The notes under the pieces are model-generated. The model made no database searches and was not told where the DNA came from. It worked only from the letters and a program-made list of their open reading frames with translations. From positions 186,001 through 250,000 of IMG/VR virus record IMGVR_UViG_3300005056_000001: 64,000 nucleotides of DNA; one strand, written 5' to 3'. Positions 1-30,669 of the stretch are shown here, in pieces. Numbering within the stretch: position 1 is the stretch's first letter; each line of letters begins with the position of its first letter. A program made the position numbers and the translations under genes.

Positions 1-5
1 TTTCC

Positions 6-521
6 ATGATTTGTGCCGAATTGGGGGGTTCTATATTAATCGACTACGACAAGGCACACACAGAGGCACTAATCATTTCGGCAAGTATGGAAAATAGGCT
101 ATATGTGGATAGCGTGCACACCAACAAAGGAAAGACAGAGGTGTTTTGCAAGTCCTACATGAAGAGTCGTTATGGGGATGGTTCGTTCCAATCATTATAC
201 ACCCCAAAACAATACTGTGCAATGGTCTGCAAGTCCTACAAGCAATTTGGGTATGGGCATAGCGTCAGAACCCGACAGACATACAAAAAATTGATCGGGC
301 TTTGTGCTGTTTGGAATTCGATGCAAAATCCTGTACAGAAATTGACAGACATGGGCATGGTCGAGGCAAACATGATACTGAGCTATTGTCATGGTGGATA
401 TATTTCACTTCATAGAGGACGTACATTGGATTTTTCTATGTTAAACACCGACAATATGAAAATGATAATCACGTCTTCCTATTATGGAATGTGTCTAAAT
501 ACAGTCTTGGCACATGCATAG
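6..521 (+). CDS. hypothetical protein (may be 5'-truncated by the window edge)
   Basis: 171-aa ORF followed by a hairpin. Confidence 0.55.
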   Translation: MICAELGGSILIDYDKAHTEALIISASMENRLYVDSVHTNKGKTEVFCKSYMKSRYGDGSFQSLYTPKQYCAMVCKSYKQFGYGHSVRTRQTYKKLIGLCAVWNSMQNPVQKLTDMGMVEANMILSYCHGGYISLHRGRTLDFSMLNTDNMKMIITSSYYGMCLNTVLAHA

Positions 522-537
522 GCAGAAATATAATTTT

Positions 538-584
538 AAAAACCCCAAACAATTTTTTGTTTGGGGTTTTTTTTGTATGTTTGT
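538..584 (+). terminator. hairpin terminator overlapping a Bacteroidota-type promoter (-7 TATGTTTG at 577-584)
   Basis: AAAACCCCAAAC...GTTTGGGGTTTT inverted repeat plus T-tract, then TAnnTTTG. Confidence 0.65.
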
Positions 585-621
585 ATACCCTAGATGATTT
601 GGGGAACTTAAATCAATAAAA

Positions 622-900
622 ATGAAAAAGGATTTTTATCTTATTAGAGAAGAATCACGACCATTCCAAGAATGTGGATATGACCTTATGGATGTCGTCT
701 CGGCAACAAGCTACGAAGAGGTTGTGAAGAATTATATTGAGGAAGAATTTATATTTGGAGGCAAAATCGAGGTTTTAGAAAACACCAAGGAGGATTTTAA
801 ATTTAACGTCTTACGGGATCGGTATATCTTTGACACCTTCTGTCTTGTAACACAAGACGAATATACCGAGTGTTATCAAAGACTAATCGAAGAATCATAG
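622..900 (+). CDS. hypothetical protein
   Basis: 92-aa ORF, A-rich start context. Confidence 0.7.
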   Translation: MKKDFYLIREESRPFQECGYDLMDVVSATSYEEVVKNYIEEEFIFGGKIEVLENTKEDFKFNVLRDRYIFDTFCLVTQDEYTECYQRLIEES

Positions 901-902
901 CC

Positions 903-1847
903 ATGGAACAAGAAAAGTTATTAAGACTTATCGAAACAGGACTTGATGTTAATATAGAATTGGCATTACAACTGTCCAAGGCGAACGGTATACCCATCGA
1001 CATGTCCGAATATAGGGAGGCACTGACTTGGTACCACGAACACGACATACATATAGGACACGACTTTCTTGATGTAGGCAACCTCTCTGTCAAAGACCTT
1101 TTAAGAAAAGTGCTATTGGTTAGAAGTATTAATATTCCATTAACCAACACAGACTCGTTGCCCAAGTGTATCCGAAGGTTCAAAAACCTTGTCACGTTGT
1201 CGGCATTCGGCAATGGCCTTGCGGAGTTACCCCAAGAAATTGGAGAGCTCGCAAACTTACAGGTATTATCCCTTGCCGACAACAAGCTGACATCATTGCC
1301 CGACACTATCGGAAGGTTAAGTGCTCTTAAATACCTAGACATAGACAACAATAATATTTCGGTACTACCTAGCACTATGAGAAATCTTGATGGTCTACTA
1401 GGAATCCGACTACTCGACAACGATTTTGAGCGGTTTCCTGACGTTCTCTGTGGGCTCAGAAACCTCCGTGAACTAAAAATGGGTCGCAATAAGATTGGGT
1501 CGATTCCAACAAAAATTGGGTTACTGACAAACCTCACAAGCCTTGACGTGTCTAATAATTGTATAAAAGAATTACCAAAGGAATTGTTTAACCTTGACAA
1601 ACTCAAGGTTTTGTCAGTATTTAACAATGAAATAAAAGAGCTCCCAAAAGAAATAGGAAGCCTTGAGTGTCTAGAAAAATTGTACCTGAGCAACAATCCA
1701 ATCGAATGTGTGCCAACAACGATAACCAATCTGACCAATCTTGACGAGTTTATTCTTCTTGGGTCAAACATGAACAAAGTAAGGCAGGCGCAAACAAGCG
1801 AATTACTATTGACGTTACCACATAAACCCGAATTCATAGTCTCCTAG
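903..1847 (+). CDS. leucine-rich repeat protein (LRR-1)
   Basis: Repeated 23-aa LPxxIGxLxxLxxLxLxxNxL units; N-terminal KLLRLIETG..NIELALQL cap; start placed at ATG 903. Confidence 0.93.
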   Translation: MEQEKLLRLIETGLDVNIELALQLSKANGIPIDMSEYREALTWYHEHDIHIGHDFLDVGNLSVKDLLRKVLLVRSINIPLTNTDSLPKCIRRFKNLVTLSAFGNGLAELPQEIGELANLQVLSLADNKLTSLPDTIGRLSALKYLDIDNNNISVLPSTMRNLDGLLGIRLLDNDFERFPDVLCGLRNLRELKMGRNKIGSIPTKIGLLTNLTSLDVSNNCIKELPKELFNLDKLKVLSVFNNEIKELPKEIGSLECLEKLYLSNNPIECVPTTITNLTNLDEFILLGSNMNKVRQAQTSELLLTLPHKPEFIVS

Positions 1848-1854
1848 AAATATC

Positions 1855-2775
1855 ATGACAACAGAAACTAAAATACACATTACGATTACCGATCTATTTA
1901 CTTCTGCAATAGAAAGTAATATCATATCGGGCTATAAATTAATGGCAGCAAATGACACCGAAATCGACCTGTCTGATTATAGGGAAATTTATAATTGGCT
2001 ACAAAAATACGGAAAGGTTGGTGGTACCAATGACACGCTTGAGATGTTATTGGAATTAAACAAGGTAACATCCCTACATTTTATGAATTTGGGGATTAAA
2101 AAGATTCCCGAATCCATTGGTTGTTTAAGGAACCTAAGATATTTATACCTGAGCAACAATACTATTAGAACCTTGCCGACAGGACTTTTTGGACTAAACC
2201 TTGAGCATCTATGGCTCGACGAGAACATAATATCAATTGTTCCTGACGGGATTGGTAGATGTTCCACACTTAGGTCTTTGTGGCTAAACAACAACAAGCT
2301 ATATACACTTCCTGTCGATTTTTCCATGTTAAAAAACCTAGAACACCTAGAGTTGTTTCGTAACAATTTTTCTAAAATTCCCGACTGTATTGGTGGCCTA
2401 GTCCAATTGAAAATATTGAACATGTGGAATAATAATATACAATTTTTGACGGGCGAGGTGTTTAGGTGTAAAAATCTGATTCTTCTTGATGTGTCAAGAA
2501 ATAATATTCGTTGTGTCGGCAATGGGATTTCCAACCTAACAAACTTGGAAAGGCTCCATATGTCAGAAAACAGGCTAAAGAGTATGTTGCCAATAACACA
2601 GGCCAATCTGCCCAACCTAAAGAGTATACTTCTTGAAACCAATAATATAACAAAACCCCCAACGGATTATTCTAGGTTGAAATCTCTTAGACTGCTAAGT
2701 TTGTACGACAACGAATTTACGACCAAGGAAGGAGAATGTATAAAAGAAGCATTAAAAGGACAAAAGTCACAGTAG
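1855..2775 (+). CDS. leucine-rich repeat protein (LRR-2)
   Basis: Tandem LRR units, e.g. IPESIGCLRNLRYLYLSNNTI. Confidence 0.93.
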   Translation: MTTETKIHITITDLFTSAIESNIISGYKLMAANDTEIDLSDYREIYNWLQKYGKVGGTNDTLEMLLELNKVTSLHFMNLGIKKIPESIGCLRNLRYLYLSNNTIRTLPTGLFGLNLEHLWLDENIISIVPDGIGRCSTLRSLWLNNNKLYTLPVDFSMLKNLEHLELFRNNFSKIPDCIGGLVQLKILNMWNNNIQFLTGEVFRCKNLILLDVSRNNIRCVGNGISNLTNLERLHMSENRLKSMLPITQANLPNLKSILLETNNITKPPTDYSRLKSLRLLSLYDNEFTTKEGECIKEALKGQKSQ

Positions 2776-2797
2776 TACTTAACACACCAAATGAACT

Positions 2798-3385
2798 ATG
2801 TATATAAAAAGAATAGTCAAGAAAATAAAGGAACACATCGAAAAGCACAACATAAGGATCTCGACATTCGAGGAATTGTCGGATGTTATTGGACAGGTTT
2901 CGGATATTGATTGTGGGTCAACCATGGATCTTCTCAAAGAATTAGGATTGGGTATGTCGGGCGAACTGTCCCCCAAGGGTTCCGATTTTATCATGACCAA
3001 ATACGTGCTTTCGGGTTCCGAAATATGTATTGTGTTTAGTGTGTCCGACAAAAAATTGGCGGACATGAGACCCGAAATCGAGGAATGGCTAAAGCAGAAG
3101 TATCCCGACAGATTCAGTGGCTTATTGATTTATGATGAGTTGGTATACAAGGGTATCACATCGGATTCATTTTCCCAACGCTTTGGTGTGACAATGGTTT
3201 TAGGCGGCCTTATCCAAGGAGACGCCATTGAGCCGTACAGGCCCGCATTGGATATCCTGACATATTGCAACGGGTTTTATATAAACAACACCCAATACAT
3301 TAAAACCTGTGACAGATTTACCAAGGGATATGTCCTAGACTACCTAAGAGACAAGGACGATTGGAAGTCTTATGCACAATTATAA
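2798..3385 (+). CDS. hypothetical protein
   Basis: 195-aa ORF in a co-directional run. Confidence 0.65.
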   Translation: MYIKRIVKKIKEHIEKHNIRISTFEELSDVIGQVSDIDCGSTMDLLKELGLGMSGELSPKGSDFIMTKYVLSGSEICIVFSVSDKKLADMRPEIEEWLKQKYPDRFSGLLIYDELVYKGITSDSFSQRFGVTMVLGGLIQGDAIEPYRPALDILTYCNGFYINNTQYIKTCDRFTKGYVLDYLRDKDDWKSYAQL

Positions 3386-3405
3386 CCAAAAAACAATTAT
3401 AAAAC

Positions 3406-3840
3406 ATGGGTACACAGGACAAGGATTACAGGGTATTGTTAAAAAAATATGAAGACCTTCAGGTTGAGTATGATGTCTTGGAGCAAGATTTTAAGTCTGC
3501 CAATGCATATGCAACCGAATGCAAAGAGGAGTTGGAGGAATCAGAGGAAAACAAAGACTCTGTGGATAAGCTAGAAAATCGGGTCGAGGATCAGAGGCTT
3601 AAAATAGAGTCTCTAGAGCGTGAGTGTGAGACAAAGTGTGACAAAATTGACGATCTGACTTGTAAACAATCAGAATTGGAGGGCGAAAAATTACATCAGG
3701 AATGGTTTGGACTTGACGACAGGTTTATTTTGTCGTCCGAAAAGGACGAAATAATCTTGTTGCTCGGAGAAGTTTCGATGGTATCGAATGGTCGAGTCAT
3801 TATAGACACACTGACCACGCTGTTGGGCAAATCACAATAG
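3406..3840 (+). CDS. coiled-coil hypothetical protein
   Basis: E/K-rich heptad pattern in the N-terminal two thirds. Confidence 0.7.
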   Translation: MGTQDKDYRVLLKKYEDLQVEYDVLEQDFKSANAYATECKEELEESEENKDSVDKLENRVEDQRLKIESLERECETKCDKIDDLTCKQSELEGEKLHQEWFGLDDRFILSSEKDEIILLLGEVSMVSNGRVIIDTLTTLLGKSQ

Positions 3841-3879
3841 TACATATCTTACTATATAATTAATAAATAATCCAATAGA

Positions 3880-4998
3880 ATGAGACGAGTAGCAGACAAT
3901 TTAAACAGAGACGATAAATATATTGATGTTGTGGTTGGTACCGAGGTGGTATGCCAAAAATACGAAACAGCCGCAAAAATTGTTGGCAAAGAATTTATGC
4001 CCAAGGTCGGACACTACGAGTACGAATTGATGTGGGAAGACGGTACAAACGCATTTGAGTTCGGGGACGTTCTTTCTTTGGCAGAGGACAAAAAATTCCT
4101 CAACGAGGCCGCCATAAGCAAGGAGGATGCCGTTGCCATTAAAAAGATGAAGGATTTCTACAAACTGACCAAGCTAGTAATCAAGCCGTTCAAGGAACTA
4201 AAAGATCAAGACAGAAACAAGGTATTGGCATCCTTTTCGGATTCTAACACCGAAATCCTTAATGTTTCGGCATTTGCATATCACATCACCTTTGTCGGAA
4301 AAGACAAAACCGAACACCAATTTTTTATTGACTTTGAGGAGCCGCTTTCTGATGCTGCCATGTTTATAACATCCTCATTCGACAGTCTGTTTGACATGTT
4401 TGCAGAAGAAGAATATGACAAGTTTTGCAAGATTCCGAACGATATTACTGTCAAGAACAAAATGATCTACACATCAGACGACTTTACAGGAACCACTTTT
4501 GTTGGGAGCTACAATGATTTATACACATACATCATTTCAACCCTTGAGGCCGACAAATATAAAATGTTGTCGTCGTTTGTGAAAGAGTTTGACTTGGGGA
4601 AGACCGAAAATGGCTATGTCAATCAGACTGCCCTAGACGGTGTAATCAAAAAAGACACCATGTCTTACTTCGATGACATGTGGGGAAAGGACGGTGTAGA
4701 ATTTATGAAAGGGAATTTCAACACTGATTATAACGAGTTGCTTGCGCTTTCCGACAAGGTTAATTTAAACAAATACAAAGACCTATACCTAGCAAAATAC
4801 TTGGCACGTCCCAAGAATCCTGTATTCTATGAAATAATGATGGAGGGTGATTTGGAAGGCGAGGTATACAAGGACATTATCGAGTACAAACATTGGATCA
4901 ACGAGAATCTATATGTGGCATGTGAGTTTATCCTTGGCAGCGAACCAATAAAAAACCTAAATGGTAAAATTTATACAGTCCCGTATATGGGAGCCTAG
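3880..4998 (+). CDS. hypothetical protein, probably late (possible virion protein)
   Basis: 372-aa acidic ORF; GTACATA motif at 3840-3846; MRRVAD N-terminus. Confidence 0.7.
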   Translation: MRRVADNLNRDDKYIDVVVGTEVVCQKYETAAKIVGKEFMPKVGHYEYELMWEDGTNAFEFGDVLSLAEDKKFLNEAAISKEDAVAIKKMKDFYKLTKLVIKPFKELKDQDRNKVLASFSDSNTEILNVSAFAYHITFVGKDKTEHQFFIDFEEPLSDAAMFITSSFDSLFDMFAEEEYDKFCKIPNDITVKNKMIYTSDDFTGTTFVGSYNDLYTYIISTLEADKYKMLSSFVKEFDLGKTENGYVNQTALDGVIKKDTMSYFDDMWGKDGVEFMKGNFNTDYNELLALSDKVNLNKYKDLYLAKYLARPKNPVFYEIMMEGDLEGEVYKDIIEYKHWINENLYVACEFILGSEPIKNLNGKIYTVPYMGA

Positions 4999-5021
4999 TT
5001 GGTCAAGACATAATATATTTT

Positions 5022-5058
5022 CAAAAGGGATGCAAAATTATTTTTGCATCCCTTTTGT
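5022..5058 (+). terminator. intrinsic terminator
   Basis: CAAAAAGGGATGCAAAA / TTTTGCATCCCTTTTTG perfect inverted repeat. Confidence 0.75.
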
Positions 5059-5102
5059 TTTTATAAATATTTATTGTACATTGGGTGCTTAACAAGAAGG
5101 AT

Positions 5103-5366
5103 ATGAGACATAAAAACACCGACGCAACAATACCAAAGATTTTTGACGGATTTGTGCAATTAAAGACCGACACGATTCTTGGGGGTCTAAACAAAAGCAA
5201 ACCAATATACAAGAAATTTATGTCTTGGCAAAACGGTTTTATGTATTTGTTGAGATACACCTTTGTTGGTGGTTGGGCAATCAACAAAGATGTCAGGGAC
5301 AGAGAATTGATAAAACCTGTTGATTATGATAATTACATCAAGATCGACCAAGTTGTAACACGATAA
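5103..5366 (+). CDS. hypothetical protein
   Basis: Short ORF abutting LRR-3. Confidence 0.6.
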   Translation: MRHKNTDATIPKIFDGFVQLKTDTILGGLNKSKPIYKKFMSWQNGFMYLLRYTFVGGWAINKDVRDRELIKPVDYDNYIKIDQVVTR

Positions 5367-5368
5367 AC

Positions 5369-6343
5369 ATGAAAACACAACAGAAGCTTCTACGACTCCT
5401 CAGAACAGGAGATACCGACAATATTGAATTGGCATATCAGTTGGCAAAGTCTAGCAATACCAAAATCGACCTGACCGAATTTCGGGCCATGCATAAAATG
5501 TTGTTCAAGTACAGTACTCTAACGTATCAGACACTTTCATGTGAGGAGGAAAAGAAAATGATCTATGAATTGTTTAATCTAAAAACGATAACCTTAGTAA
5601 AGGACTATGTGGAACACGACAGTCTTTGTCATTTACAAAATGTTACTAGCATAACAATGAACGGATTGTGTCTGACCAAGGTTCCTGAATGGATTTATTC
5701 ACTAAATAACCTAGAATATCTATCACTTTCCACCAATATAATTCCTGTATTTCCCAAGCGTTTGTGTGGGATGACAAAACTAAAACATCTTGGTTTTTAT
5801 AATAGCAGAGTCGAAACTATTCCTGACGAGATTGGGAACCTGACCGAGTTAGTATACTTAAATCTGAGTGGTGGTTACCTAAAGGAACTCCCTGAATCAA
5901 TCGGAAATCTAACAAATCTTAAAACATTGGGTGTCGGATTCAACCAAATAACACACCTTCACGAATCAATCGGAAATCTTACAGAAATATGTTACTTACA
6001 TATTAATAACAATAATATTAAACACCTCCCCGAATCAATTGGAAGCCTGACAGATATTATTCATTTTGACATGTCAGCCAACGAGATCGAGTTGTTCCCC
6101 CAATCCATCGGGAACCTAAAAAACTTGTCACTTCTGATAGCCTACAAGAACAAAATCGAAATATTGCCCGACACAATGGGAAGTTTAGAGCAAGTTGAAA
6201 TGTTAAGACTAGACAGCAACCAAATAAACACAGTGTCCGAGTCCATAGGCAACCTACAAAACCTGTATAAAATAGAACTCAGAAACAACCCAATAAACAA
6301 AACTTCTGTACCAATCTCGTTCAGACACAAAATAACCAAATAA
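5369..6343 (+). CDS. leucine-rich repeat protein (LRR-3)
   Basis: LPESIGNLTNLKTL-type units; N-cap KLLRLLRTG..NIELAYQL matches LRR-1. Confidence 0.94.
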   Translation: MKTQQKLLRLLRTGDTDNIELAYQLAKSSNTKIDLTEFRAMHKMLFKYSTLTYQTLSCEEEKKMIYELFNLKTITLVKDYVEHDSLCHLQNVTSITMNGLCLTKVPEWIYSLNNLEYLSLSTNIIPVFPKRLCGMTKLKHLGFYNSRVETIPDEIGNLTELVYLNLSGGYLKELPESIGNLTNLKTLGVGFNQITHLHESIGNLTEICYLHINNNNIKHLPESIGSLTDIIHFDMSANEIELFPQSIGNLKNLSLLIAYKNKIEILPDTMGSLEQVEMLRLDSNQINTVSESIGNLQNLYKIELRNNPINKTSVPISFRHKITK

Positions 6344-6741
6344 TGACAAAAACATTCGAAGAAACAAAAAAGACACACCTAGAATGCTGCCTGACAAGAG
6401 ACCTAGAAGGGCTGAGTATAACCAAGGCAGACGAACACGGAGTTAATTGTGTTGGTGTACATTTTTTTGAGGAGCCACCAACACTAGACGAGTTCGTCGA
6501 GAAGTGTTACTACATTGAAAGCGCAATAGACATGATTATCTTTATGGAATTCACATTCAAACAGGCATTTTTCCATGGATTGGTAGACTTCAACGACTAT
6601 GACAGTCTTGCTACCAAACAGAAGCATTTTCGTACCGCCACACTTGATTATTTTGGGGCACAAACAAACGGGAATATTCCTGACGAGGCAAAGTTTCATG
6701 ACGCTCTATTAGAGTTTGGAAGATCACTTTTTGAACAATAA
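6343..6741 (+). CDS. hypothetical protein
   Basis: 132 aa, TAATG stop-start overlap. Confidence 0.7.
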   Translation: MTKTFEETKKTHLECCLTRDLEGLSITKADEHGVNCVGVHFFEEPPTLDEFVEKCYYIESAIDMIIFMEFTFKQAFFHGLVDFNDYDSLATKQKHFRTATLDYFGAQTNGNIPDEAKFHDALLEFGRSLFEQ

Positions 6742-6750
6742 AGAACAATA

Positions 6751-6981
6751 ATGGAAATAACAACAATATTAAAAACAGGCCAAAGTCCGTATAGAACTCA
6801 CGAAAAAATAAAACCTCCAAAGGGTTTTAGACTAGACATAGACGAAACAAAAATGTATAAAACAACCTACCTGTCCCCACACCAAAGCAGATCAAAGCTT
6901 TGGGAATACGGCTTCTTCCTTGTAAAGGGGTGTTGGTTGACAGAAAATCAAATATTTTTGAATAGTGTTTCTAGGAATTGA
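6751..6981 (+). CDS. hypothetical protein
   Basis: 76-aa ORF. Confidence 0.6.
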   Translation: MEITTILKTGQSPYRTHEKIKPPKGFRLDIDETKMYKTTYLSPHQSRSKLWEYGFFLVKGCWLTENQIFLNSVSRN

Positions 6982-7015
6982 GGCAATATTTTAAGTAATG
7001 ACATAAAAAATAAAA

Positions 7016-7228
7016 ATGGAAATAACACTCAAGTCGGTAATAACTTACAGGCAACGTATCGAATTTGGACTAGTAATCGCCAAAGAAATTCTTGGCCATG
7101 ATTATGAATGGAACGAGATGTCGGATATATTGGATATGGATATAAGTTATTCGTATATCATAGCCGAAGATGTTTTTGAATACATGGACTGTACCGAGGA
7201 TGTTTATGACGAAATCATTAAAAAAAAT
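7016..7228 (+). pseudogene. 5' part of a hypothetical gene interrupted by the IS1595 element
   Basis: ORF runs into the left terminal inverted repeat; a plausible remainder (IKEKTPLSAAEKAC...) lies at 11317-11457. Confidence 0.65.
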
Positions 7229-7278
7229 GGCAATTACATACCTTTTTACACCAAATAAATAACAGTACAGACAATAAC

Positions 7279-7320
7279 GATAAAAGCCCCAACCTATCCG
7301 AATAGGTTGTGGCTTTTATC
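7279..7320 (-). terminator. terminator of the lipoprotein gene
   Basis: GATAAAAGCC..AACCTAT / ATAGGTT..GGCTTTTATC inverted repeat. Confidence 0.7.
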
Positions 7321-7336
7321 TATTTTAATCAATTAT

Positions 7337-8125
7337 CTACTGAACAGCATCCAACATCAACATTTGAATCTTATTCATTCTAACCATTTGCTTTGTAGTT
7401 AAATCATCAGATGAAGTTTGTAGTTTATTTGAAAACTTCGTAGCCTTCTCCATAAGTGCAGGGTATTCACCTAGAGCAGAAGGATCACCGTCCATTGCTT
7501 TTCTGTACACAGAAACGTACTTCTTAGTGTAATCTTCATACTCATCCAACACTTCATCCCACTCAGTTGACGAACTAACCACAGGAGTTGAATTAGAACT
7601 ATTAGATGCGACTTTAGATACCACATTTTCTTTTAGGCTAGATGTTAGTCTTACTGTCTTTGCCTTTGAAGGATCCACAATCAACCCTTTGTCATAAATC
7701 ATAAACTCAAGCCAAATAGTTTCGCCCTCATTTAGTGATAGACATTGTTCAAACGGTTTTGTACCATACTTACCTAAATTCGTTACAATTGGGGAGCCCG
7801 AAACATCCATGATATCGGCATTGATACAATATTCATTTGACTTCCCTGCACCCACGCCACAATATTGGACATCGTTAACGTCAAAAGTAAAATCCTTGTC
7901 TGTACGCTTAATCTCGACCAACAGCTTATGCCCATAGGCACTTGCCGCAATATTCAAACTTGAATTTACAATCTCAAAATTTGAGGATAAGGCACCATTC
8001 ATTAATTGAGTGACTTCTAGCTTAGTGTTACTTGCCTTTAACTCTTCTTTTTTGGTTTCACCACCACAAGAAATAAGGAATAACAATATCATTAATACCC
8101 CAAAAACATTTTTTAAACTTTTCAT
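7337..8125 (-). CDS. lipoprotein, DUF6591-like C-terminus (IS cargo)
   Basis: Lipobox LISC after a signal peptide; C-terminal WDEVLDEYEDY..Y helix resembles DUF6591 (recalled, not searched). Confidence 0.75.
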   Translation of the reverse strand: MKSLKNVFGVLMILLFLISCGGETKKEELKASNTKLEVTQLMNGALSSNFEIVNSSLNIAASAYGHKLLVEIKRTDKDFTFDVNDVQYCGVGAGKSNEYCINADIMDVSGSPIVTNLGKYGTKPFEQCLSLNEGETIWLEFMIYDKGLIVDPSKAKTVRLTSSLKENVVSKVASNSSNSTPVVSSSTEWDEVLDEYEDYTKKYVSVYRKAMDGDPSALGEYPALMEKATKFSNKLQTSSDDLTTKQMVRMNKIQMLMLDAVQ

Positions 8126-8626
8126 ATTATGTTATTTGTTACTTTTGGAGGCAAAAAGCGGAATGTTTAGGTTGAAATCAAAATGGTAAAAAAGAAGGCG
8201 TACCCCCTGCATAATTCCAATGCCTGATAGGTACGACCAAGCACCCAACACAATTGAAATAGCAATGAGGACACGCCCATAGTGGCGCATCATCAGTCAT
8301 TCTCTTGTGTTATATTAAAATTGGTCGTTTTATCAAGCAAGAAATGTCCGCAACGCAAACTCTTTATATATTATATGGTCTTATCTTTTATTCGATAGTT
8401 CTATTTTTGGTTTAAAATGGGCACAACATTGTCTCCACTTCTGTATTCATAAATACAAAAGTATACTATTTTTATGGAATTAGAAAACACTTGGCTGTGT
8501 TTTTAGTTCGTTTAGTGAAATTAATTGTTTGAATAGTTAGTTAAGTCGTTGGTAGGCATAAAAAAACTCGCCCATTTTAGCATTGTTAAGTGGCTTGGCG
8601 AGTGTGTTGGTTCTTTATTAAATGTA

Positions 8627-8809
8627 CTACATGATTGGAATATCAAGCTGTTTACATATTAACTCACCTAAACTCCTATCAATTGTTGTATGTCTAGGAA
8701 CAGAAGTTTTCTTACCCACTGAATTTTTCCATATAGCGTGTTTTTTACCATTTCTATGAAAAACGCAATCATTACTTGTTAAATGCTTAAGAAACTTTGT
8801 TGTTTTCAA
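8627..8809 (-). CDS. hicA: HicA-family toxin (mRNA interferase)
   Basis: GKKHAIW, SVPRH and ICKQLDIP motifs; TTG start at 8809 preferred over 8833. Confidence 0.85.
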   Translation of the reverse strand: MKTTKFLKHLTSNDCVFHRNGKKHAIWKNSVGKKTSVPRHTTIDRSLGELICKQLDIPIM

Positions 8810-8819
8810 ATCAAAAATA

Positions 8820-10154: not shown

Positions 10155-10191
<37 letters not shown>

Positions 10192-11657: not shown

Positions 11658-11681
11658 ACAAAAATAGACTCCCTATTCAAA

Positions 11682-26361: not shown

Positions 26362-26907
26362 CTACAGATAATTATTGCTGATTATGTATGCCAATGTCGG
26401 GTCTTTTTCGCCAAGCTCCGTGAATCTTGGTGTCTTCTTATACATGTTAGGATAGATTTCGGAATTGTCGTATGCCTCCCTTTCCCATGGCAACTCTTTG
26501 TGCTTCTCGAAGTCTCGGTTTGATTTGTAGTCCTCAAGGGTAATGTAATCATTGCCGTCCCATGTAAACCATGTCATGTCGCTATTGACGCCCAACTTTA
26601 CATTTACGATCTGCCAAATGTGGGTCATTTCATGGGTGATAATCTTTAGAATGGGCATGGTTCCAAACTTGCTGTCGATGTTTATTTTAACATCTTTTTT
26701 CTTGTCGTCTAGCAAGTCTTTCATGTCTATATTACCAAATATATGTTTCGGCATTTTTCGATAATTCAAAAGAATATTCTTTTGGATATTTTGCAGATCT
26801 AAAATTTCAAGGAGCCATTCGGTGTAGTCCACGAATAGTATCTTTTCGTATTCGGACATTCCTCCCTTGGTCTTTACCTTTATCTTTGACTCGGTTATCC
26901 TTCTCAT
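26362..26907 (-). CDS. HExxH zinc-metallopeptidase-like protein with MRRITE leader
   Basis: THEMTHIWQ...LPWEREAY. Confidence 0.75.
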   Translation of the reverse strand: MRRITESKIKVKTKGGMSEYEKILFVDYTEWLLEILDLQNIQKNILLNYRKMPKHIFGNIDMKDLLDDKKKDVKINIDSKFGTMPILKIITHEMTHIWQIVNVKLGVNSDMTWFTWDGNDYITLEDYKSNRDFEKHKELPWEREAYDNSEIYPNMYKKTPRFTELGEKDPTLAYIISNNYL

Positions 26908-27845
26908 ATTGTTGGGTATTGAATGATTGTTAATGAAGTCATTTCCTTGGTGAAATCAAGGGTTCCTAGGTCTATTTTGGTGCCACTAATATTTAACCTC
27001 CTGAGCATTTCCATTTTTCGCATCGTACTTGGGAGGTCTGCAATGGGCGAACCCTGAATATCCAACTCCTCCAACTTCTTTAGCTTGCCAATAGACTTGG
27101 GGAGTTCGGCTATATTGTTGTGATTGAGCCAAAGTTTTTTGAGTCTTCGTAGGTCTCCAATTGTCTTGGGGACGTCCTTGATATTGTTGTAACCCAAGCC
27201 CAACAGCCTTAATTTTTTAAGGCTTCCGATACTTGGCGGCAACGACTTTAGATTGTTGTTTATCATAAAAAACTCCTCCAAGTTAACTAGCATGCCAATT
27301 CCTGTCGGGATATTATTAATCGAATTTTTGTTGATATAGAGCTCCTTTAGGGAGGTTAGGCCGCCAACATAACGACTCAGTGATGTTAGCCTGTTTTTGT
27401 TCAAAATAAGCACCTCAAGATTTGCAAGTTTTCGGATCGTTGTTGGTAGTGTGGCCAATGAATTATTCTGAAGCTCCAAGGACTTTAGATTTGTTAGATC
27501 ACCAATAGAACTTGGCAACTCCTTGAGTCCACAACCCGTGACGGTTAGCGTGCGCAACATTTTCAACAGCCCCAATTGGTCGGGGAGTCTGTCAATCTTG
27601 GTGTCTCTAATAACAATGTGCTCGTCTAAAAACAGCCCTTTAAGGTCGTGTTTTAAGATTTTTAGCATAGGGGCGAACTCGACCTTTAATTCTGCCTCTA
27701 TACCCAAAGAAAGCTCTGTGTCAAGCCTGAATGCCGATATAATGTTGAGCCGTTCGCCTGTCTTGATTAGGTTATACGCATTCTTGCGTTCTTTATTACG
27801 CTTTTTTTCATCCTCGGGGTTTGTTGCCTCTGTTATTCTACGCAT
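26904..27845 (-). CDS. leucine-rich repeat protein (LRR-4) with MRRITE leader
   Basis: LPSSIGDLTNLKSLELQNNSL-type repeats. Confidence 0.93.
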   Translation of the reverse strand: MRRITEATNPEDEKKRNKERKNAYNLIKTGERLNIISAFRLDTELSLGIEAELKVEFAPMLKILKHDLKGLFLDEHIVIRDTKIDRLPDQLGLLKMLRTLTVTGCGLKELPSSIGDLTNLKSLELQNNSLATLPTTIRKLANLEVLILNKNRLTSLSRYVGGLTSLKELYINKNSINNIPTGIGMLVNLEEFFMINNNLKSLPPSIGSLKKLRLLGLGYNNIKDVPKTIGDLRRLKKLWLNHNNIAELPKSIGKLKKLEELDIQGSPIADLPSTMRKMEMLRRLNISGTKIDLGTLDFTKEMTSLTIIQYPTI

Positions 27846-27864: not shown

Positions 27865-28569
27865 TCATATAACCGTTATCCCTCGCATATCGTTCCTAAA
27901 GAATTTGCCTACCTTTACAGGGTGTTCCCAAGGATTATCCTTGATAGACAATACGCCAAGACCCTGTAACTTGACAAGGTCGTTTGGGAGGTTTGTTATT
28001 TGATTGTTGCCGAGTCTTAGTGTCTCAAGATTGGTCATATCGCCAATATATGACGGGATCTTGGTCAAGTGATTATAGCCCATATCCAAGGATTTTAGAC
28101 TATCCATCTTTGACAATACCTTTGGAATGATTTTAAAGTCATTCTCGTCAAGATATAATGTGCGGAGCCTTGTCAGGTTTTCGATTGTTTTTGGAAGACT
28201 TGACAATTTATTTTGTGACAGTCCTAGGAAATCCAAATTTTCCAAGTCGCCTATTTCCTTTGGGAGTTCGAAAATGCCGTTGGCTTCCAATTGAAGTTCT
28301 CTTAGGTTTGTCAACATTCCAATTTCTTTTGGGACTGTGCCGATTCCGTCGCCTGTTAGGTCAATACTGTCTGCCATAAACAAACCAAGCAGGTCTGTCT
28401 CCATTGAAGTAAGGAAATATGAAAATATATCCTCTAGCTCTGCAATGTACCCAAGCCCTACCGACTCATCAAATGCGATTGCTGTTTCTATGCTGTCTTG
28501 ATCACCCGACAATAATTGTGCCTTAACAAAATTAATATTGTCGGACTTACTTTCTACTATACGTTTCAT
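27865..28569 (-). CDS. leucine-rich repeat protein (LRR-5) with MKRIVE leader
   Basis: LPKEIGDLENLDFLGLSQNKL-type repeats. Confidence 0.93.
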   Translation of the reverse strand: MKRIVESKSDNINFVKAQLLSGDQDSIETAIAFDESVGLGYIAELEDIFSYFLTSMETDLLGLFMADSIDLTGDGIGTVPKEIGMLTNLRELQLEANGIFELPKEIGDLENLDFLGLSQNKLSSLPKTIENLTRLRTLYLDENDFKIIPKVLSKMDSLKSLDMGYNHLTKIPSYIGDMTNLETLRLGNNQITNLPNDLVKLQGLGVLSIKDNPWEHPVKVGKFFRNDMRGITVI

Positions 28570-28571: not shown

Positions 28572-30248
28572 TTATAATTGTTCAAACACTCCATTCTTTT
28601 GGGCAAATACCATAACAGAATCGTTCAGTGTTGTTAGTGTGTTGTTGTTAAAAAGTGCAATAGGTCTCAATATAGGAATTTCTCCGTTATTAACCGCAAT
28701 ACTATTCAAAGAATTTAGACCAAGGTTAGGATTCTTTCCGACAGGAACCTCTTTTCGGACACGTTGTACAATACGGGATGTTCCGCTAGAGGTTACCTCG
28801 TTCACGAAATAGTACCCGTTCGATTTTGCCAACTCGTTGTCTTCCGAAAATATGTTGACCTGCACGGATTTAATTTCGTTCATGTTGTAGATCCCGTTTT
28901 CGATATCCGAATTCACAATAATATTATCAAACTTCATGTCCCTGCTTTTGAATGTTGCCTTTAACATCAATTCGGATACAATGTCTCGGATCTCGTTTAG
29001 TACTTGGGCGTCATCATCAAAATCACCCCTGACATAGATTAGCATGGAATACCTTTTTAACACAGGATTTTCCATTATAATTTCGGATGTCGGAAATTGT
29101 CTCTTGGAGTTGTTAATCATACTTTTGATGGCATCCTTTTGGGGCAATGTCAGGGAAAACCTAGTCTCGGACATATTCAAGTAATCACGGCTGTTCAAAA
29201 AGTTTAGACTCGGCAATGCCAACACATGCATGATTAGATCATTGTTCTTGTCTGACCAAACAGACACATGAGACAATATACTAAGACGGCTAAGATATGC
29301 CTGTAGGTTTTCGGGTCTAACAAACGTGAATGCCCTTGACGAATGTCCGATTAAGTTTCGGGTTACCTCGGGATGTTCTCCGTTTGAGGCCAAAATTAGT
29401 CCTGTGGAGCGTGTGATTATAAAGTCTGTGAGCTCGTCACCGTTCGAGTTGGTGAATCCTTCCACGATTGTAAATTTATCCCCACGACTCAATATTCCCA
29501 ACTCGCCATTGGTGACCATATATTCGACCTCGACAACATCGCCGTGTTTTAATTCAACCCCGTGTGTGGTGTCGCCAAAAATAATATCCAACTGACTTTG
29601 CCATCCATTCTCCGTAATGTACACCTCGTCGCCTTGTGCCATGTCCTCAATACTGTCTGTTTTTGACCACAGGACATTGTTTACCTTTACCTTGACAGAA
29701 TAATGTTCGATATATTCCTCGTCTTCCAATCGGATTGTAAATAGTGTGGTGTCTTCGCTCGTGGCATCAATCACAAAAGATTGATTTTTTAGAATCCCTT
29801 GTATTATTGGCAGCTCAATGGTGTTGTTACTGAGCGAGTATTTCTTTTCGGTGTCGATGTTTACGGTATAAACAAGACTGTTTGTTGTGCAAGTAAGCGT
29901 GGCGGTCGGAGAAACATACAAAAAACTACCAACTGCAAACGACTCGTTCTTTCGGAGCTTCACGGTACCACGGGCCGAAATTGGTCGTGTTGCCTCGTGT
30001 CCTGATATCGAGGCCAAGCCCCTTATTGAGGTCGGCTTTGTGACGGTCTGTGGTGCCAATTGTCTATGTGACTGTGCTTGGTATAACAAGGACAGGTTTA
30101 GCTGATCCTGAAGCACATCAAGAACGATTTTATAAAGCCTTGCCTGTGCAGAATCACGCATCCCCAATGTCTTGGCAATAAACTCATTTACCTGAGTTCT
30201 CATGCGATTCATTCTGATCGAAGATTGGTCGAAGATTTTTAGTGCCAT
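28572..30248 (-). CDS. baseplate wedge protein, T4 gp6-like
   Basis: SIRGLASISGHEATR, IIQG, IIFGD...G and VEVEY.VTNG motifs; GTACATA at 30262-30268. Confidence 0.8.
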   Translation of the reverse strand: MALKIFDQSSIRMNRMRTQVNEFIAKTLGMRDSAQARLYKIVLDVLQDQLNLSLLYQAQSHRQLAPQTVTKPTSIRGLASISGHEATRPISARGTVKLRKNESFAVGSFLYVSPTATLTCTTNSLVYTVNIDTEKKYSLSNNTIELPIIQGILKNQSFVIDATSEDTTLFTIRLEDEEYIEHYSVKVKVNNVLWSKTDSIEDMAQGDEVYITENGWQSQLDIIFGDTTHGVELKHGDVVEVEYMVTNGELGILSRGDKFTIVEGFTNSNGDELTDFIITRSTGLILASNGEHPEVTRNLIGHSSRAFTFVRPENLQAYLSRLSILSHVSVWSDKNNDLIMHVLALPSLNFLNSRDYLNMSETRFSLTLPQKDAIKSMINNSKRQFPTSEIIMENPVLKRYSMLIYVRGDFDDDAQVLNEIRDIVSELMLKATFKSRDMKFDNIIVNSDIENGIYNMNEIKSVQVNIFSEDNELAKSNGYYFVNEVTSSGTSRIVQRVRKEVPVGKNPNLGLNSLNSIAVNNGEIPILRPIALFNNNTLTTLNDSVMVFAQKNGVFEQL

Positions 30249-30669
30249 TGTATTTTTATTATATGTACTGTTTTTTTTGAAAAAACGGAAAATGTATGAA
30301 TTATTGGCGTTTTAATACAAAAAAGTGCCATTTGCTACCCCAATAAAAAACGTCAAAAAGCCTAATAACAGCTATGGTGGTCTAGCCCTGTGTTTGTCGA
30401 ATGTTCAGGAAAATAAAAAAGCCCATATTTCCCAAGAAAAAACACCCACTTTTGCAAAAAATGGCGAAATCGTCCTCTTTTTGCCCTAAAAATTAGACTT
30501 TTTCGATATTCGAGGCCTATTTTTTCATTTGAGTTTTTTGGGTTAAATTTATTACCACTCTGTAACCCTTTATATATCGAATGTATGCGATTTTTTATAA
30601 TGTGAATATTTTGGCTGTCTACTAGTAAAACAATAATAACTTTAATTTAATAACAAAATCAACAAAAAC

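What the first reader, a model, noticed from the sequence alone, without database searches (positions are those of the whole stretch)
903..6343. Expanded, divergent LRR repertoire on a phage with a shared helical N-cap
Seen: five LRR-only proteins in 64 kb, all with 23-aa repeats. The scaffold is conserved while the exposed xxLxLxx strand residues differ. LRR-1 and LRR-3 share the cap LLRL..TG...NIELA.QL.K.....ID; weaker versions appear in LRR-4 (LIKTGERLNIISA) and LRR-5 (LLSGDQDSIETA). None has an enzymatic domain. Established: LRRs are protein-binding scaffolds, uncommon in bacteriophages but expanded in some marine Bacteroidota. Inference: host-derived LRRs amplified into a panel of binders or decoys, deployed in two waves (early-expressed and late/packaged).
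Basis: partly seen in the sequence, partly recalled or inferred. Interest (0 to 1): 0.7.

Follow-up and report, generated by a model that had tools for sequence, protein, structure and literature searches.

The report
Jumbo phage with 28 capped LRR genes
A 368-kb marine jumbo phage spends about 6% of its genome on some 28 enzyme-free leucine-rich-repeat proteins that share a four-helix N-terminal cap otherwise found almost only in chromosomes of Saprospiraceae and a few Cytophagales, and related phages keep the family at the same loci while its sequences change fast; what the proteins bind is unknown.

Summary
The window is part of a complete 368,109-bp phage genome with terminal repeats. Its five LRR-only ORFs are real (Pfam E 1e-17 to 1e-37, 23-residue repeats, no other domain). 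The whole genome has 28 such ORFs, about 6% of the DNA, in 23-residue and 22-residue subfamilies. The N-cap is a distinct module of about 70 residues, modelled as four helices (pLDDT 93). It heads 23 ORFs, all LRR or LRR fragments, and LRR-2 carries a degenerate copy. Outside the phage the cap is rare: 98 clusters among 1.84 billion proteins. It occurs in chromosomes of Aureispira, other Saprospiraceae and a few Cytophagales, with 2 to 49 weak-threshold matches per genome, and in two related phage contigs. Those relatives keep LRR genes at matching loci at 24-39% identity, against a median of about 52% for other shared proteins. Two promoter-like motifs separate the window copies. LRR-1 and LRR-2 follow a Bacteroidota-type TAnnTTTG box. 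LRR-5 and LRR-4 are co-transcribed with a baseplate wedge gene from the GTACATA motif that also precedes terminase and tail genes. Function as binders, decoys or virion parts remains inferred, and so does the direction of transfer between host and phage.

The parts
538..571 (+). Intrinsic-terminator-like hairpin that closes the upstream gene and precedes the LRR-1/LRR-2 operon
   Evidence: Stem of 15 pairs followed by a T-run; sequence read.
576..583 (+). TATGTTTG box, a match to the Bacteroidota sigma-A -7 consensus TAnnTTTG, about 40 nt before the ATG at 622. Putative early promoter used by host polymerase.
   Evidence: Sequence. It has the same 'hairpin then TAnnTTTGTA' layout as the genome-wide class C elements before small ORFs. 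The consensus itself comes from established knowledge.
622..900 (+). Small ORF (92 aa), first gene of the operon, unknown function
   Evidence: no Pfam match.
903..1847 (+). LRR-1 (314 aa): cap at residues 1 to about 70, then about 9 repeats of 23 residues, with a degenerate C-terminal cap (LPHKPEFIVS)
   Evidence: Pfam LRR_14 2e-31; cap profile 62 bits; motif spacing 23; C-terminus.
1855..2775 (+). LRR-2 (306 aa), starting 8 nt after LRR-1, with a degenerate cap (ITDLFTSAIESNIISGYKL...EIDLSDYREIYNWL)
   Evidence: Pfam LRR_8 2e-24; cap profile 55 bits.
2798..4998 (+). Three unknown ORFs in the same transcription unit (2798-3385, 3406-3840, 3880-4998)
   Evidence: no significant Pfam or PHROG matches.
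5022..5057 (+). Terminator-like hairpin that ends the LRR-1/LRR-2 unit
   Evidence: Stem of 16 pairs followed by a T-run.
5074..5082 (+). TTGTACATT, one mismatch from the late-type motif TTGTACATA, 29 nt before the ATG at 5103
   Evidence: Sequence; motif definition.
5103..5366 (+). Small ORF directly upstream of LRR-3
5369..6343 (+). LRR-3 (324 aa): canonical cap (residues 1-69, four helices) followed by 23-residue repeats
   Evidence: Pfam LRR_14 2e-32; cap profile 67 bits; model of residues 1-177 with pLDDT 93.
26362..26907 (-). ORF of 181 aa whose start overlaps the stop of LRR-4 by 4 nt; last gene of the wedge operon
   Evidence: phrog_16532, unknown function.
26904..27845 (-). LRR-4 (313 aa): N-terminal extension of 17 residues (RRITE...), divergent cap and 9 repeats. 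Its positional ortholog in the related phage G006 is 39% identical.
   Evidence: Pfam LRR_14 8e-37; cap 46 bits; synteny; alignment.
27865..28569 (-). LRR-5 (234 aa), starting 2 nt after the wedge stop codon, with a divergent cap and 5-6 repeats
   Evidence: Pfam LRR_14 2e-23; cap 51 bits.
28572..30248 (-). Baseplate wedge-like protein (558 aa), first gene of the operon that holds LRR-5 and LRR-4
   Evidence: phrog_219 'baseplate wedge subunit' at 6e-18; 71% identical ortholog in G006, also followed by an LRR gene.
30262..30269 (-). AGTACATA, a late-type motif A, 21 nt upstream of the wedge start codon
   Evidence: Sequence. The same motif lies 20-50 nt upstream of genes for terminase large subunit, a tail protein and a baseplate protein.

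Best explanation
The five window genes belong to a multigene family specific to this phage lineage. The 368-kb jumbo phage has 28 such ORFs, probably about 27 genes. The likely host is a marine gliding member of the Bacteroidota, probably in the Saprospiraceae.

Each protein is a soluble module without any enzyme domain. It has a four-helix cap of about 70 residues (KIxxLLxTGDxxNIELAxQLxKSNxIxLDLxxYxxLxxWL), then 5 to 12 leucine-rich repeats, then a short degenerate C-terminal cap. The module is homologous to a family of cytoplasmic cap-LRR proteins that is itself expanded in the chromosomes of the probable host clade.

My reading of the mechanism is that the phage uses these proteins as interchangeable protein-binding scaffolds in two temporal classes. 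Most copies, including LRR-1 and LRR-2, lie in operons of small genes behind host-type promoters. I infer that they are made early and act in the cytoplasm, where they bind host proteins, most plausibly by imitating the host's own cap-LRR adaptors and competing for their partners. A divergent-cap subgroup is tied to virion genes. LRR-5 and LRR-4 are co-transcribed with a baseplate wedge gene from the late-type promoter, and two further divergent-cap copies elsewhere in the genome lie next to a baseplate gene and an adaptor-like gene. I infer that this subgroup is made late and is a peripheral virion or baseplate accessory.

Shown here: family membership, copy number, the cap and its modelled fold, its distribution in cells and phages, synteny with fast divergence, and the link between promoter motifs and gene classes. 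Inferred: the timing of expression, what is bound, mimicry of host proteins, and virion association.
For: - Pfam finds only LRR domains in the five window proteins.
- The genome holds 28 LRR ORFs totalling 22.2 kb, or 6.0% of its length, and is a complete phage.
- The cap heads 23 ORFs, all of them LRR or LRR fragments. It is modelled as four helices with pLDDT 93 and pTM 0.86.
- No hydrophobic segment is present in any copy (maximum Kyte-Doolittle value over 19 residues below 1.6).
- The cap is rare worldwide: 98 clusters among 1.84e9 proteins at E<=1e-3, and nearly all of them are an N-terminal cap followed by LRRs.
- Cellular copies exist. One lies between T9SS, cytochrome c assembly and thyA genes. 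Others are in Aureispira, Saprospiraceae, Cytophagaceae and AO1-C genomes, including megabase-sized contigs. Weak-threshold matches number 11, 23, 2, 49 and 30 per genome.
- At E<=1e-5 the cap was found in 0 of 400 other Bacteroidota, 0 of 200 other genomes of the same order, and 7 of 151 genomes of the family (6 besides the centre genome G001).
- AlphaFold DB clusters A1ZSF0 and H6L4Y0 match the cap as well as the LRRs.
- Relatives G006 and L008 keep LRR genes at syntenic loci at 24-39% identity. The neighbouring genes are 46-71% identical, and 61 shared non-LRR proteins have a median of 52.5%.
- Motif A (GTACATA) precedes genes for terminase, a tail protein, a baseplate protein and the wedge. 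TAnnTTTG elements behind hairpins precede small ORFs and the LRR-1/LRR-2 operon.
Against: - No expression, proteome or interaction data exist, so 'early' and 'late' rest on motif associations alone.
- LRR-3 sits behind a late-like motif although it has no structural neighbours.
- The LRR g143218 lies upstream of the baseplate gene's own late motif and may not be co-transcribed with it.
- The wedge plus LRR-4 complex prediction gave no verdict.
- The function of the cellular family is unknown. Its only fusions are to TPR and BRCT domains, with no NTPase or TIR domain, so the idea of mimicking host adaptors has no identified target.
- Exposed concave and convex positions have diverged equally in the one ortholog pair. 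That pattern fits relaxed constraint as well as an arms race.
- Two copies appear to be split by frameshifts.
Confidence: 0.4

Rival explanations
1. All or most copies are virion-borne adhesins or receptor-binding accessories. The conserved N-terminal module would dock onto the baseplate or tail and the variable LRR arc would contact the cell surface, giving a multivalent particle like the fibre cloud proposed for phage Goslar.
For: - The proteins combine a conserved N-terminal module with a variable C-terminal part.
- LRR-5 and LRR-4 occupy the gene slots just after the wedge gene, where myoviruses such as P2 and Mu usually place peripheral wedge and fibre genes (established knowledge). This position is conserved in G006.
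- Another LRR abuts a baseplate protein gene and another follows an adaptor-like gene.
- Sequence divergence is much faster than in neighbouring genes.
Against: - The cap is part of the LRR fold and also heads cytoplasmic cellular proteins that have no virion to dock to.
- Most copies sit in long same-strand blocks with genes such as DNA ligase and small unknown ORFs behind TAnnTTTG-type promoters, and not behind motif A.
- No trimerisation or fibre-like segment is present.
- The complex prediction gave no support, which is not evidence against binding.
Confidence: 0.2
2. The early copies are anti-defence decoys or sequestering proteins. Each would bind and neutralise a host immune sensor or effector, and the family would expand and turn over as host defences change.
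For: - The family is multi-copy, fast-evolving and shows gains and losses between relatives.
- It has an early-type promoter context.
- The proteins are soluble binding folds without enzyme domains.
- Filamentous multicellular bacteria are rich in LRR-bearing conflict systems (PMC8195603).
- One cellular homolog lies beside a Dnd/SNF2/SMC-type island.
Against: - I know of no described LRR anti-defence protein, and the literature searches found none.
- The cap-bearing cellular proteins I examined are not fused to NTPase, TIR or nuclease domains.
- There is no concave-face-specific divergence.
- The hypothesis could not be tested directly here.
Confidence: 0.2
3. The family is largely dispensable cargo. 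A host-type repeat gene duplicated and drifted in a roomy jumbo-phage genome, without a specific conserved function for individual copies.
For: - Two copies are split by frameshifts.
- Loci are gained and lost between relatives.
- Divergence is equal at all exposed positions.
- Paralogs are only 29-40% identical.
Against: - Nearly all copies are intact ORFs with a preserved hydrophobic scaffold and cap.
- The family is retained at syntenic loci in three phages whose shared proteins are only about 50% identical.
- It takes up 6% of the genome.
- The 22-residue subfamily shows recent amplification at 50-63% identity.
Confidence: 0.1

Closest known systems
Cap-LRR proteins encoded in chromosomes of Saprospiraceae (Aureispira; probably Saprospira) and some Cytophagales ('Marine bacterium AO1-C'; probably Microscilla). 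The family is unnamed and uncharacterised.
   Same: They share the same N-terminal helical cap motif (LLxSGDxxNIELAxQL...IxLDLxxYxxLxxWL). They have the same 23-residue LxxLxLxxNxLxxLPxxIGxLxx repeats, no signal peptide and no enzyme domain, and they are often tandem and multi-copy. AlphaFold DB clusters A1ZSF0 and H6L4Y0 superpose over both cap and LRRs. Assigning those two accessions to organisms rests on my memory, because the tool hides the names.
   Different: Cellular copies usually end in a C-terminal cap of the form ...LPxCxIxF, which is degenerate or missing in the phage copies. Some cellular proteins join the first cap hairpin to TPR or BRCT domains. The phage also has a 22-residue subfamily with its own cap variant and a THPTAxIxI tail, and I did not look for that subfamily in cells.
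Leptospira LRR proteins (LIC12234, LIC12759, LIC10831) and eukaryotic SHOC2, Rsu1, CNOT6L and LRRC8 LRR domains
   Same: These are the best structural matches to the repeat region, with Foldseek E 6e-8 to 1e-4 and 23-32% identity. They belong to the same 23-residue repeat class.
   Different: The matches cover only about 90-130 columns, which is the LRR part, and none reproduces the four-helix cap. The Leptospira proteins are secreted or lipoproteins (established knowledge), whereas the phage proteins have no signal peptide.
DUF7941 'fibre cloud' proteins of Chimalliviridae phage Goslar (bioRxiv 10.64898/2026.04.21.720040)
   Same: A jumbo phage carries about ten paralogs that share an N-terminal module, three of which have variable C-terminal parts, including LRR or beta-helix domains, and are proposed to be peripheral baseplate host-recognition elements.
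   Different: The N-module is different, since Pfam finds no non-LRR domain here. This phage is related to Tenacibaculum jumbo phages rather than to Chimalliviridae (DNA polymerase 31% identical to pT24). Most copies here are not in structural-gene contexts.
Repeat-protein expansions (ankyrin, LRR, F-box, BTB) in giant viruses of eukaryotes, and the LRR clusters in huge phage LR756500.1 and in Leptospira LE1-like elements
   Same: These are large paralogous families of repeat scaffolds resembling host proteins inside a large viral genome. LR756500.1 has 19 LRR places and the LE1-like records have 5 and 22.
   Different: LR756500.1 lacks this cap (one match of 15 bits). The comparison with giant viruses rests on my own knowledge and is an analogy only.
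PHROG phrog_6688 (unknown function)
   Same: All five window proteins, and the two copies with a different N-domain, match it at 1e-37 to 1e-47.
   Different: The match covers only the C-terminal LRR half of a 681-position profile. The family carries no functional annotation.

Membership tests
Leucine-rich repeat superfamily (Pfam LRR_8, LRR_4, LRR_14), 23-residue class | Tandem LxxLxLxxN/C motifs with a fixed period of 20-30 residues | tested here: met
   Pfam scores of 62-127 bits against cut-offs of 27-40. Motif spacing is 23 residues. The consensus of 73 repeats is L(E/K)xLxLxxNxIxxLPxSIGNLxN.
Leucine-rich repeat superfamily (Pfam LRR_8, LRR_4, LRR_14), 23-residue class | Curved solenoid fold with one short strand per repeat | tested here: met
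   The predicted models alternate a strand and a short helix every 23 residues. Foldseek hits to solved LRR proteins have probability 1.00. This rests on prediction only.
Cellular cap-LRR family of Saprospiraceae and Cytophagales | N-terminal helical cap containing the NIELAxQL motif directly before the repeats | tested here: met
   The cap profile scores 46-67 bits for the five window proteins. The same profile finds chromosomal proteins at up to 58 bits.
Cellular cap-LRR family of Saprospiraceae and Cytophagales | C-terminal cap ending in ...LPxCxIxF | tested here: not met
   None of the 28 phage copies has the Cys-containing motif. A few keep a degenerate form (LLPDVTVIF, LPHKPEFIVS, ILPHTNINY). 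The motif is not universal outside the phage either, occurring in 10 of 51 metagenomic cap proteins.
Cellular cap-LRR family of Saprospiraceae and Cytophagales | No signal peptide or membrane segment | tested here: met
   The maximum 19-residue hydropathy is below 1.6 in all 28 copies, and the N-terminus is the cap itself.
Phage receptor-binding proteins and tail fibres | Gene located in a tail or baseplate module and expressed late | tested here: inconclusive
   This holds for LRR-5 and LRR-4 (wedge operon behind motif A). It holds loosely for g143218 and g254802. It does not hold for LRR-1, LRR-2 and most other copies.
Phage receptor-binding proteins and tail fibres | Physical presence in the virion and attachment to the baseplate | not testable with these tools
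   No proteome or structure is available. The wedge plus LRR-4 complex prediction returned no verdict.
Goslar-type DUF7941 fibre proteins | N-terminal DUF7941 module | tested here: not met
   Pfam finds no non-LRR domain in any of the five proteins. The cap is a four-helix bundle of about 70 residues with only generic structural neighbours.
Type III-secreted LRR effectors (YopM, IpaH, SspH type) | LRRs of 20-22 residues with an N-terminal secretion signal or two-helix cap and, for IpaH/SspH, a C-terminal NEL ligase domain | tested here: not met
   No NEL or other domain is present. None of these proteins appears among the top 50 solved-structure matches. The window copies have 23-residue repeats.
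Internalins | Signal peptide, three-helix cap, 22-residue repeats and an Ig-like inter-repeat domain | tested here: not met
   InlA and InlB appear only as generic LRR matches. No signal peptide is present and no extra domain.
Targets of diversity-generating retroelements | A reverse transcriptase and template repeat in the same genome | tested here: not met
   There is no RVT_1 match in the 368-kb genome and no DNA-level repeats in the window's LRR genes.

The most novel reading that the evidence does not exclude
A lineage of marine jumbo phages has turned a cytoplasmic LRR adaptor family of its filamentous Bacteroidota hosts into a diversified repertoire of about 28 members that works as a combinatorial binder set. 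Early copies would neutralise or rewire host proteins, possibly immune sensors. A divergent subgroup would be built into the baseplate as a new class of receptor-binding protein based on an LRR solenoid.
Probability: 0.2. Interest if true: 0.8.

Novelty: new variant of a known kind. Interest (0 to 1): 0.6.

Why it matters
LRR proteins are the standard recognition scaffolds of eukaryotic innate immunity and of many bacterial effectors, but they are rare in phages and have no established role there. Only 5 of 50,697 phage records match LRR-1.

In this lineage about 6% of a 368-kb genome is a capped LRR family shared with one narrow host clade. The family is kept at the same loci in three diverged phages, it evolves faster than its neighbours, and it appears to be split between early and baseplate-linked late expression.

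If the copies bind host proteins or the cell surface, they would be a natural library of binders aimed at one bacterium. They would also open a way to study the unstudied cap-LRR family of Saprospiraceae, and could add a new fold to the known types of phage receptor-binding or host-takeover proteins.

The cap profile is also a practical marker for finding these phages and for linking them to hosts.

Tried and rejected
- **DNA search of phages.** blastn of window 1-8000 against 50,697 phage records found nothing.
- **Pattern scans with the wide cap alignment.** Scans with A2 failed because no stretch was conserved enough. With the narrower A3, the IMG/VR scan confirmed no locus, so relatives had to be found through the DNA polymerase.
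- **Huge phage LR756500.1.** It has many LRRs but not this cap, so it is not part of the same family.
- **G007.** This 19-kb contig differs from the window by 1 mismatch in 13.3 kb, so it carries no divergence information.
- **Single-sequence fold.** The model of LRR-3 left the cap below pLDDT 50. It was replaced by the model built from the alignment.
- **Structure searches for the cap.** The PDB search returned only generic LRR matches. The Atlas search with the cap alone returned generic small helical bundles such as AAA+ lid and MgsA_C at TM about 0.6, which means little at 70 residues.
- **Cap tree.** With 88 rows and 76 columns it was unresolved. It neither shows nor excludes one origin for the phage copies, so no donor or direction is claimed.
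- **dN/dS.** I did not attempt it, because the only ortholog pairs are 24-39% identical and synonymous sites must be saturated. I replaced it with identity by position class.
- **Complex prediction.** Wedge plus LRR-4 scored 0.00, giving no verdict for or against binding.
- **Sequencing runs.** Only a few short identical contigs turned up, in one subsurface and one seawater metagenome. They give no population variation and no RNA.
- **Effector-domain fusions.** A search for NTPase, TIR or kinase fusions among cap-bearing proteins found only LRR, TPR and BRCT.
- **DGR idea.** Rejected, since the genome has no reverse transcriptase.
- **Literature searches.** They found no description of an LRR expansion in a jumbo phage or of the Saprospiraceae family.
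- **Cellular contamination.** Rejected on the terminal repeats, the CheckV estimate of 100%, and the terminase, tail and baseplate genes.

Full report
**1. Where the window lies**

The window is bases 186,001-250,000 of a single 368,109-bp virus record. The record has direct terminal repeats, a CheckV completeness estimate of 100%, and 38% G+C. It is a tailed jumbo phage. The window encodes a ribonucleotide reductase, a DNA polymerase and a baseplate wedge-like protein. Elsewhere the genome encodes a terminase large subunit, a tail protein and a baseplate protein.

The DNA polymerase is closest to those of jumbo phages of Bacteroidota. It is 31% identical to Tenacibaculum phage pT24 and about 23% identical to PTm1 and PTm5. 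It also has weak matches to Sphingomonas phage PAU and to metagenomic huge phages. At the DNA level nothing in 50,697 phage records matches the window. Short identical contigs occur in one subsurface and one seawater metagenome.

**2. The observation**

Each matches several Pfam LRR models far above the curated thresholds and matches no other family. All five match phrog_6688, which has no known function. The LxxLxLxxN motifs recur every 23 residues. No copy has a hydrophobic segment that could be a signal peptide or membrane anchor.

**3. The family is much larger than five**

LRR profiles find matches in clusters all along the genome. An HMM built from the five window proteins recovers 28 ORFs at E <= 2e-12. 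Together they span 22.2 kb, or 6.0% of the genome.

There are two subfamilies:
- The first has 23-residue repeats with consensus L(E/K)xLxLxxNxIxxLPxSIGNLxN. It includes all five window genes. Its paralogs are only 29-40% identical to each other.
- The second has 22-residue repeats (…NQLTTPPILEGLVNL…). It sits in three clusters at genome positions 65-71 kb, 99.5-102.3 kb and 108.7-110.5 kb. Its members are 50-63% identical and end in THPTAxIxI.

Two genes seem to be split by frameshifts. One is a cap-only ORF at 100296-100577 that overlaps an LRR-only ORF at 100571-101050. The other is the pair 109484-110113 and 110107-110526. Two copies (73659-74498 and 74517-75314) carry a different N-terminal domain of about 120 residues with no family match.

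**4. The cap**

Aligning the N-termini of 21 and then 22 paralogs gives the consensus KIxxLLxTGDxxNIELAxxL…L. In the canonical copies it continues as …KSNxIxLDLxxYxxLxxWL. A profile of this region hits 23 ORFs in the genome, all of them LRR proteins or LRR fragments. The next-best ORF scores 10 bits.

A single-sequence fold left the cap at low confidence. With a 47-sequence alignment of cap plus first repeats (A4), the model reaches pLDDT 93 and pTM 0.86. It shows four helices (2-12, 16-28, 36-48, 58-69) followed by the first LRR strand at residue 73.

Solved structures match only the repeat part, with hits to CNOT6L, Leptospira LIC12234 and LIC12759, LRRC8, Rsu1, SHOC2 and internalins. On its own the cap resembles generic small helical bundles, which says nothing about function.

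Five copies form a divergent-cap subgroup that lacks the 'IxLDL' insertion: LRR-4, LRR-5, g143218, g254802 and g135679. In the cap tree LRR-5 pairs with g143218, and LRR-4 pairs with its G006 ortholog.

**5. The cap outside this genome**

A profile search of 1.84 billion representative proteins gives only 98 hits at E <= 1e-3, and some of those are the phage's own proteins. Almost all of the hits I read have the cap at the N-terminus followed by LRRs. A few have two cap-LRR units in tandem, and many end in …LPxCxIxF.

The genomic contexts fall into two kinds:
- **Cellular.** One homolog lies among cytochrome c assembly genes, a T9SS-tail protein gene, ABC-F, FKBP genes and thyA, which is a Bacteroidota chromosome. 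A pattern scan of one genome per GTDB species finds the cap in two Aureispira MAGs, another Saprospiraceae MAG, two Cytophagaceae MAGs and 'Marine bacterium AO1-C'. Within five of these genomes the profile gives 11, 23, 2, 49 and 30 matches at E <= 0.01. Many matches lie on megabase contigs, and many cover only the first two helices. The cellular proteins have no signal peptide and are often tandem. They consist only of cap plus LRRs, or of the first cap hairpin plus a few LRRs plus TPR or BRCT. None has an NTPase, TIR or kinase domain.
- **Phage-like.** These are the two related contigs described in section 6.

At E <= 1e-5 the cap was not found in 400 other evenly sampled Bacteroidota genomes. 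It was not found in 200 other genomes of the order of the Aureispira genome. It was found in 7 of 151 genomes of its family, counting that genome itself. Two AlphaFold DB clusters, A1ZSF0 and H6L4Y0, superpose over cap and repeats. From memory these are Microscilla marina and Saprospira grandis entries, but the tool hides the organism names.

The family is therefore narrow, and it is expanded in a few lineages of marine filamentous gliding Bacteroidota. This makes a Saprospiraceae-like host likely, and it supports a relationship between the phage family and a host-clade family.

It does not settle the direction of transfer. A tree of the cap region (88 rows, 76 columns) is unresolved. Only the 22-residue subfamily is a firm clade, and a single origin of the phage copies is neither shown nor excluded.

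**6. Related phages**

The DNA polymerase finds two IMG/VR contigs. G007 (19 kb) is the same phage, with 1 mismatch in 13.3 kb. G006 is a 137-kb fragment, estimated at 37% of a genome, with a polymerase 59% identical. It has eight or nine LRR ORFs, several with the cap.

Sixty-one non-LRR proteins shared with the window's genome are 52.5% identical at the median, with quartiles of 41% and 61%. The LRR ORFs reach only 28-39% to their best match.

Synteny with G006 shows four things:
- The wedge gene (71% identical) is followed by an LRR gene in both phages. That gene is the ortholog of LRR-4 (39% identical, alignable end to end, with a shared N-terminal R[RK]I[TS]E motif).
- The locus next to the homolog of the gene that ends at window 521 holds LRR-1 and LRR-2 here. 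In G006 it holds three LRR genes whose best matches are other paralogs.
- Two G006 LRR loci have no counterpart in this genome.
- LRR genes are thus both retained in position and gained or lost between the two phages.

A third relative is the 9.9-kb metagenomic contig L008. Its NA37-like and GmrSD_N-like genes are 46-49% identical to genome genes at 106-108 kb. They are followed by five tandem cap-LRR genes that are syntenic with the five-gene cluster at 114.4-118.4 kb but only 24-33% identical to it. The 22-residue cluster between them is absent from L008.

The capped LRR family is therefore ancestral to this phage lineage, persistent at fixed loci and fast-evolving.

In the one clean ortholog pair, scaffold positions are 53% identical, concave-face x positions 29% and convex x positions 25%. 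There is no sign that the concave face in particular is diversifying. There is also no reverse transcriptase and no DNA-level repeat structure. A DGR or recent repeat shuffling can therefore be set aside.

**7. Expression classes**

A k-mer enrichment analysis of intergenic DNA gives two element types.

Motif A, (T)TGTACATA, lies 20-50 nt before start codons. Every gene behind it that has a functional annotation is a morphogenesis gene: terminase large subunit, a tail protein (phrog_8763), a baseplate protein (phrog_37871) and, as AGTACATA at -21, the baseplate wedge gene. I read it as the late promoter. That reading is an inference.

The second type is a composite: tandem GTTAA boxes, a terminator hairpin, then TAnnTTTGTAAGGCAAT about 35-70 nt before small ORFs. 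TAnnTTTG is the -7 consensus of Bacteroidota primary-sigma promoters (established knowledge), so I read these as promoters used early by host polymerase. This too is an inference.

In the window:
- A hairpin at 538-571 and TATGTTTG at 576-583 precede ORF 622-900. LRR-1, LRR-2 and three unknown ORFs follow, up to the hairpin at 5022-5057.
- After that hairpin, TTGTACATT at 5074-5082 (one mismatch from motif A) precedes ORF 5103-5366 and LRR-3.
- The wedge gene, LRR-5 (2-nt gap), LRR-4 (19-nt gap) and a 181-aa ORF (4-nt overlap) form one unit behind motif A.

Elsewhere in the genome:
- The LRR g143218 lies just upstream of a baseplate protein gene that has its own motif A.
- The LRR g254802 follows an adaptor-like gene that is itself behind motif A.
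- The clusters at 99-102 kb and 306 kb lie in units headed by TAnnTTTG elements, and the first of those units also contains an NAD-dependent DNA ligase.

'Packaged' is not shown.

**8. What it most likely is and does**

These are soluble binding scaffolds without enzyme domains, belonging to a host-clade family. My preferred reading is given under Best explanation: early cytoplasmic copies act on host proteins, most simply by imitating the host's own cap-LRR adaptors, and a late subgroup linked to the baseplate acts as virion accessories.

The main rivals are:
- An all-virion adhesin set, by analogy with the Goslar DUF7941 proteins.
- Anti-defence decoys. LRR sensors are common in the conflict systems of multicellular bacteria.
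- Dispensable cargo.

A complex prediction for wedge plus LRR-4 gave no verdict. I could not reach proteomic, transcriptomic or interaction data with these tools.

**9. Comparison and novelty**

Membership in the LRR superfamily is met. Membership in the cellular cap-LRR family is met for the cap and for the lack of a signal peptide, but not for the C-terminal Cys-containing cap. The proteins are not internalins, type III LRR effectors, DUF7941 proteins or DGR targets (see the membership table).

LRR genes in phages are rare. Only five of 50,697 records match LRR-1: one huge phage, two Leptospira elements and two short records of 1.9 and 8.5 kb. The literature searches found no description of such an expansion, or of this cap, in phages or in Saprospiraceae.

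I class the finding as a new variant of a known kind, namely a repeat-scaffold expansion in a large virus. It has a newly defined cap module and a defined link to a host clade.

Noticed in passing
window 8627-11245 (- strand), within the low-GC patch at about 8000-12000: A small mobile-looking island sits just downstream of the LRR-3 block. It holds a HicA toxin-family ORF (8627-8833; Pfam 28.3 bits against a cut-off of 27) that overlaps a HicB-like ORF (8820-9110; judged by eye, no Pfam hit). It also holds a P63C-domain protein (9183-10154) and an IS1595-family DDE transposase (10277-11245). G+C drops to 0.33-0.35 here, against about 0.38 elsewhere.
   Followed up: partly
whole genome; examples at window 30262-30269 (-), 5074-5082 (+) and 576-583 (+): There are two genome-wide regulatory element types. 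(T)TGTACATA lies 20-50 nt before morphogenesis genes. The second is a composite of tandem GTTAA boxes, a terminator hairpin and TAnnTTTGTAAGGCAAT before small ORFs. These are candidate late and early promoters for this phage lineage.
   Followed up: partly
window 30670-31515 (+): An ORF of 281 aa belongs to the endonuclease/exonuclease/phosphatase superfamily (Pfam Exo_endo_phos, 1e-10). Its only PHROG match is weak (2e-6), to a family labelled 'cytolethal distending toxin B subunit', which is a DNase-I-like fold. It is divergently placed next to the wedge operon.
   Followed up: no
genome 100296-101050 and 109484-110526 (loci L002:1296-2050 and L002:10484-11526): Two 22-residue-type LRR genes are each split into two overlapping ORFs in different frames, with a 7-nt overlap. 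In both cases the downstream ORF starts at a ...VNL... repeat position. They could be frameshift pseudogenes, assembly errors or programmed shifts.
   Followed up: no
genome 73659-75314 (L001:17659-19314, - strand): Two adjacent LRR proteins lack the helical cap. They carry a different N-terminal domain of about 120 residues with no Pfam or PHROG match, and they keep the most cell-like C-terminal cap (…LLPDVTVIF and …MLPSVHVHF).
   Followed up: partly
locus L052 (G004 'Marine bacterium AO1-C', contig 27, 1,205,001-1,213,000): Four tandem chromosomal genes (350-440 aa) join the first cap hairpin (KIKxLLxSGExxNIxLAxQL) to two or three LRRs and a TPR array. Other cap-bearing proteins carry a BRCT domain. 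The cap hairpin is therefore not restricted to pure LRR proteins in cells.
   Followed up: partly
locus L006/L007 (Logan contigs), gene at L006:10001-11062: A cap-LRR gene lies between a Dnd-associated/SMC-like/SNF2 helicase cluster and a block containing Amidase_2 and GH108 lysis-type genes. It is unclear whether this contig is cellular, a prophage or a defence island.
   Followed up: no
window 18132-19598 (-): An ORF of 488 aa has only a sub-threshold match to the coronavirus S2 profile (23 bits against a cut-off of 40). This is most likely a coiled-coil artefact. The function is unknown.
   Followed up: no
genome 50885-51704 (- strand), outside the window: A cluster of four tRNA genes: Ser-TGA, Tyr-GTA, His-GTG and Ala-TGC.
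   Followed up: no
window 47250-47822 (+): An ORF of 190 aa gives a marginal match to the cap profile (E 0.04, 10 bits) and has no LRRs and no Pfam hit. This is probably chance.
   Followed up: partly
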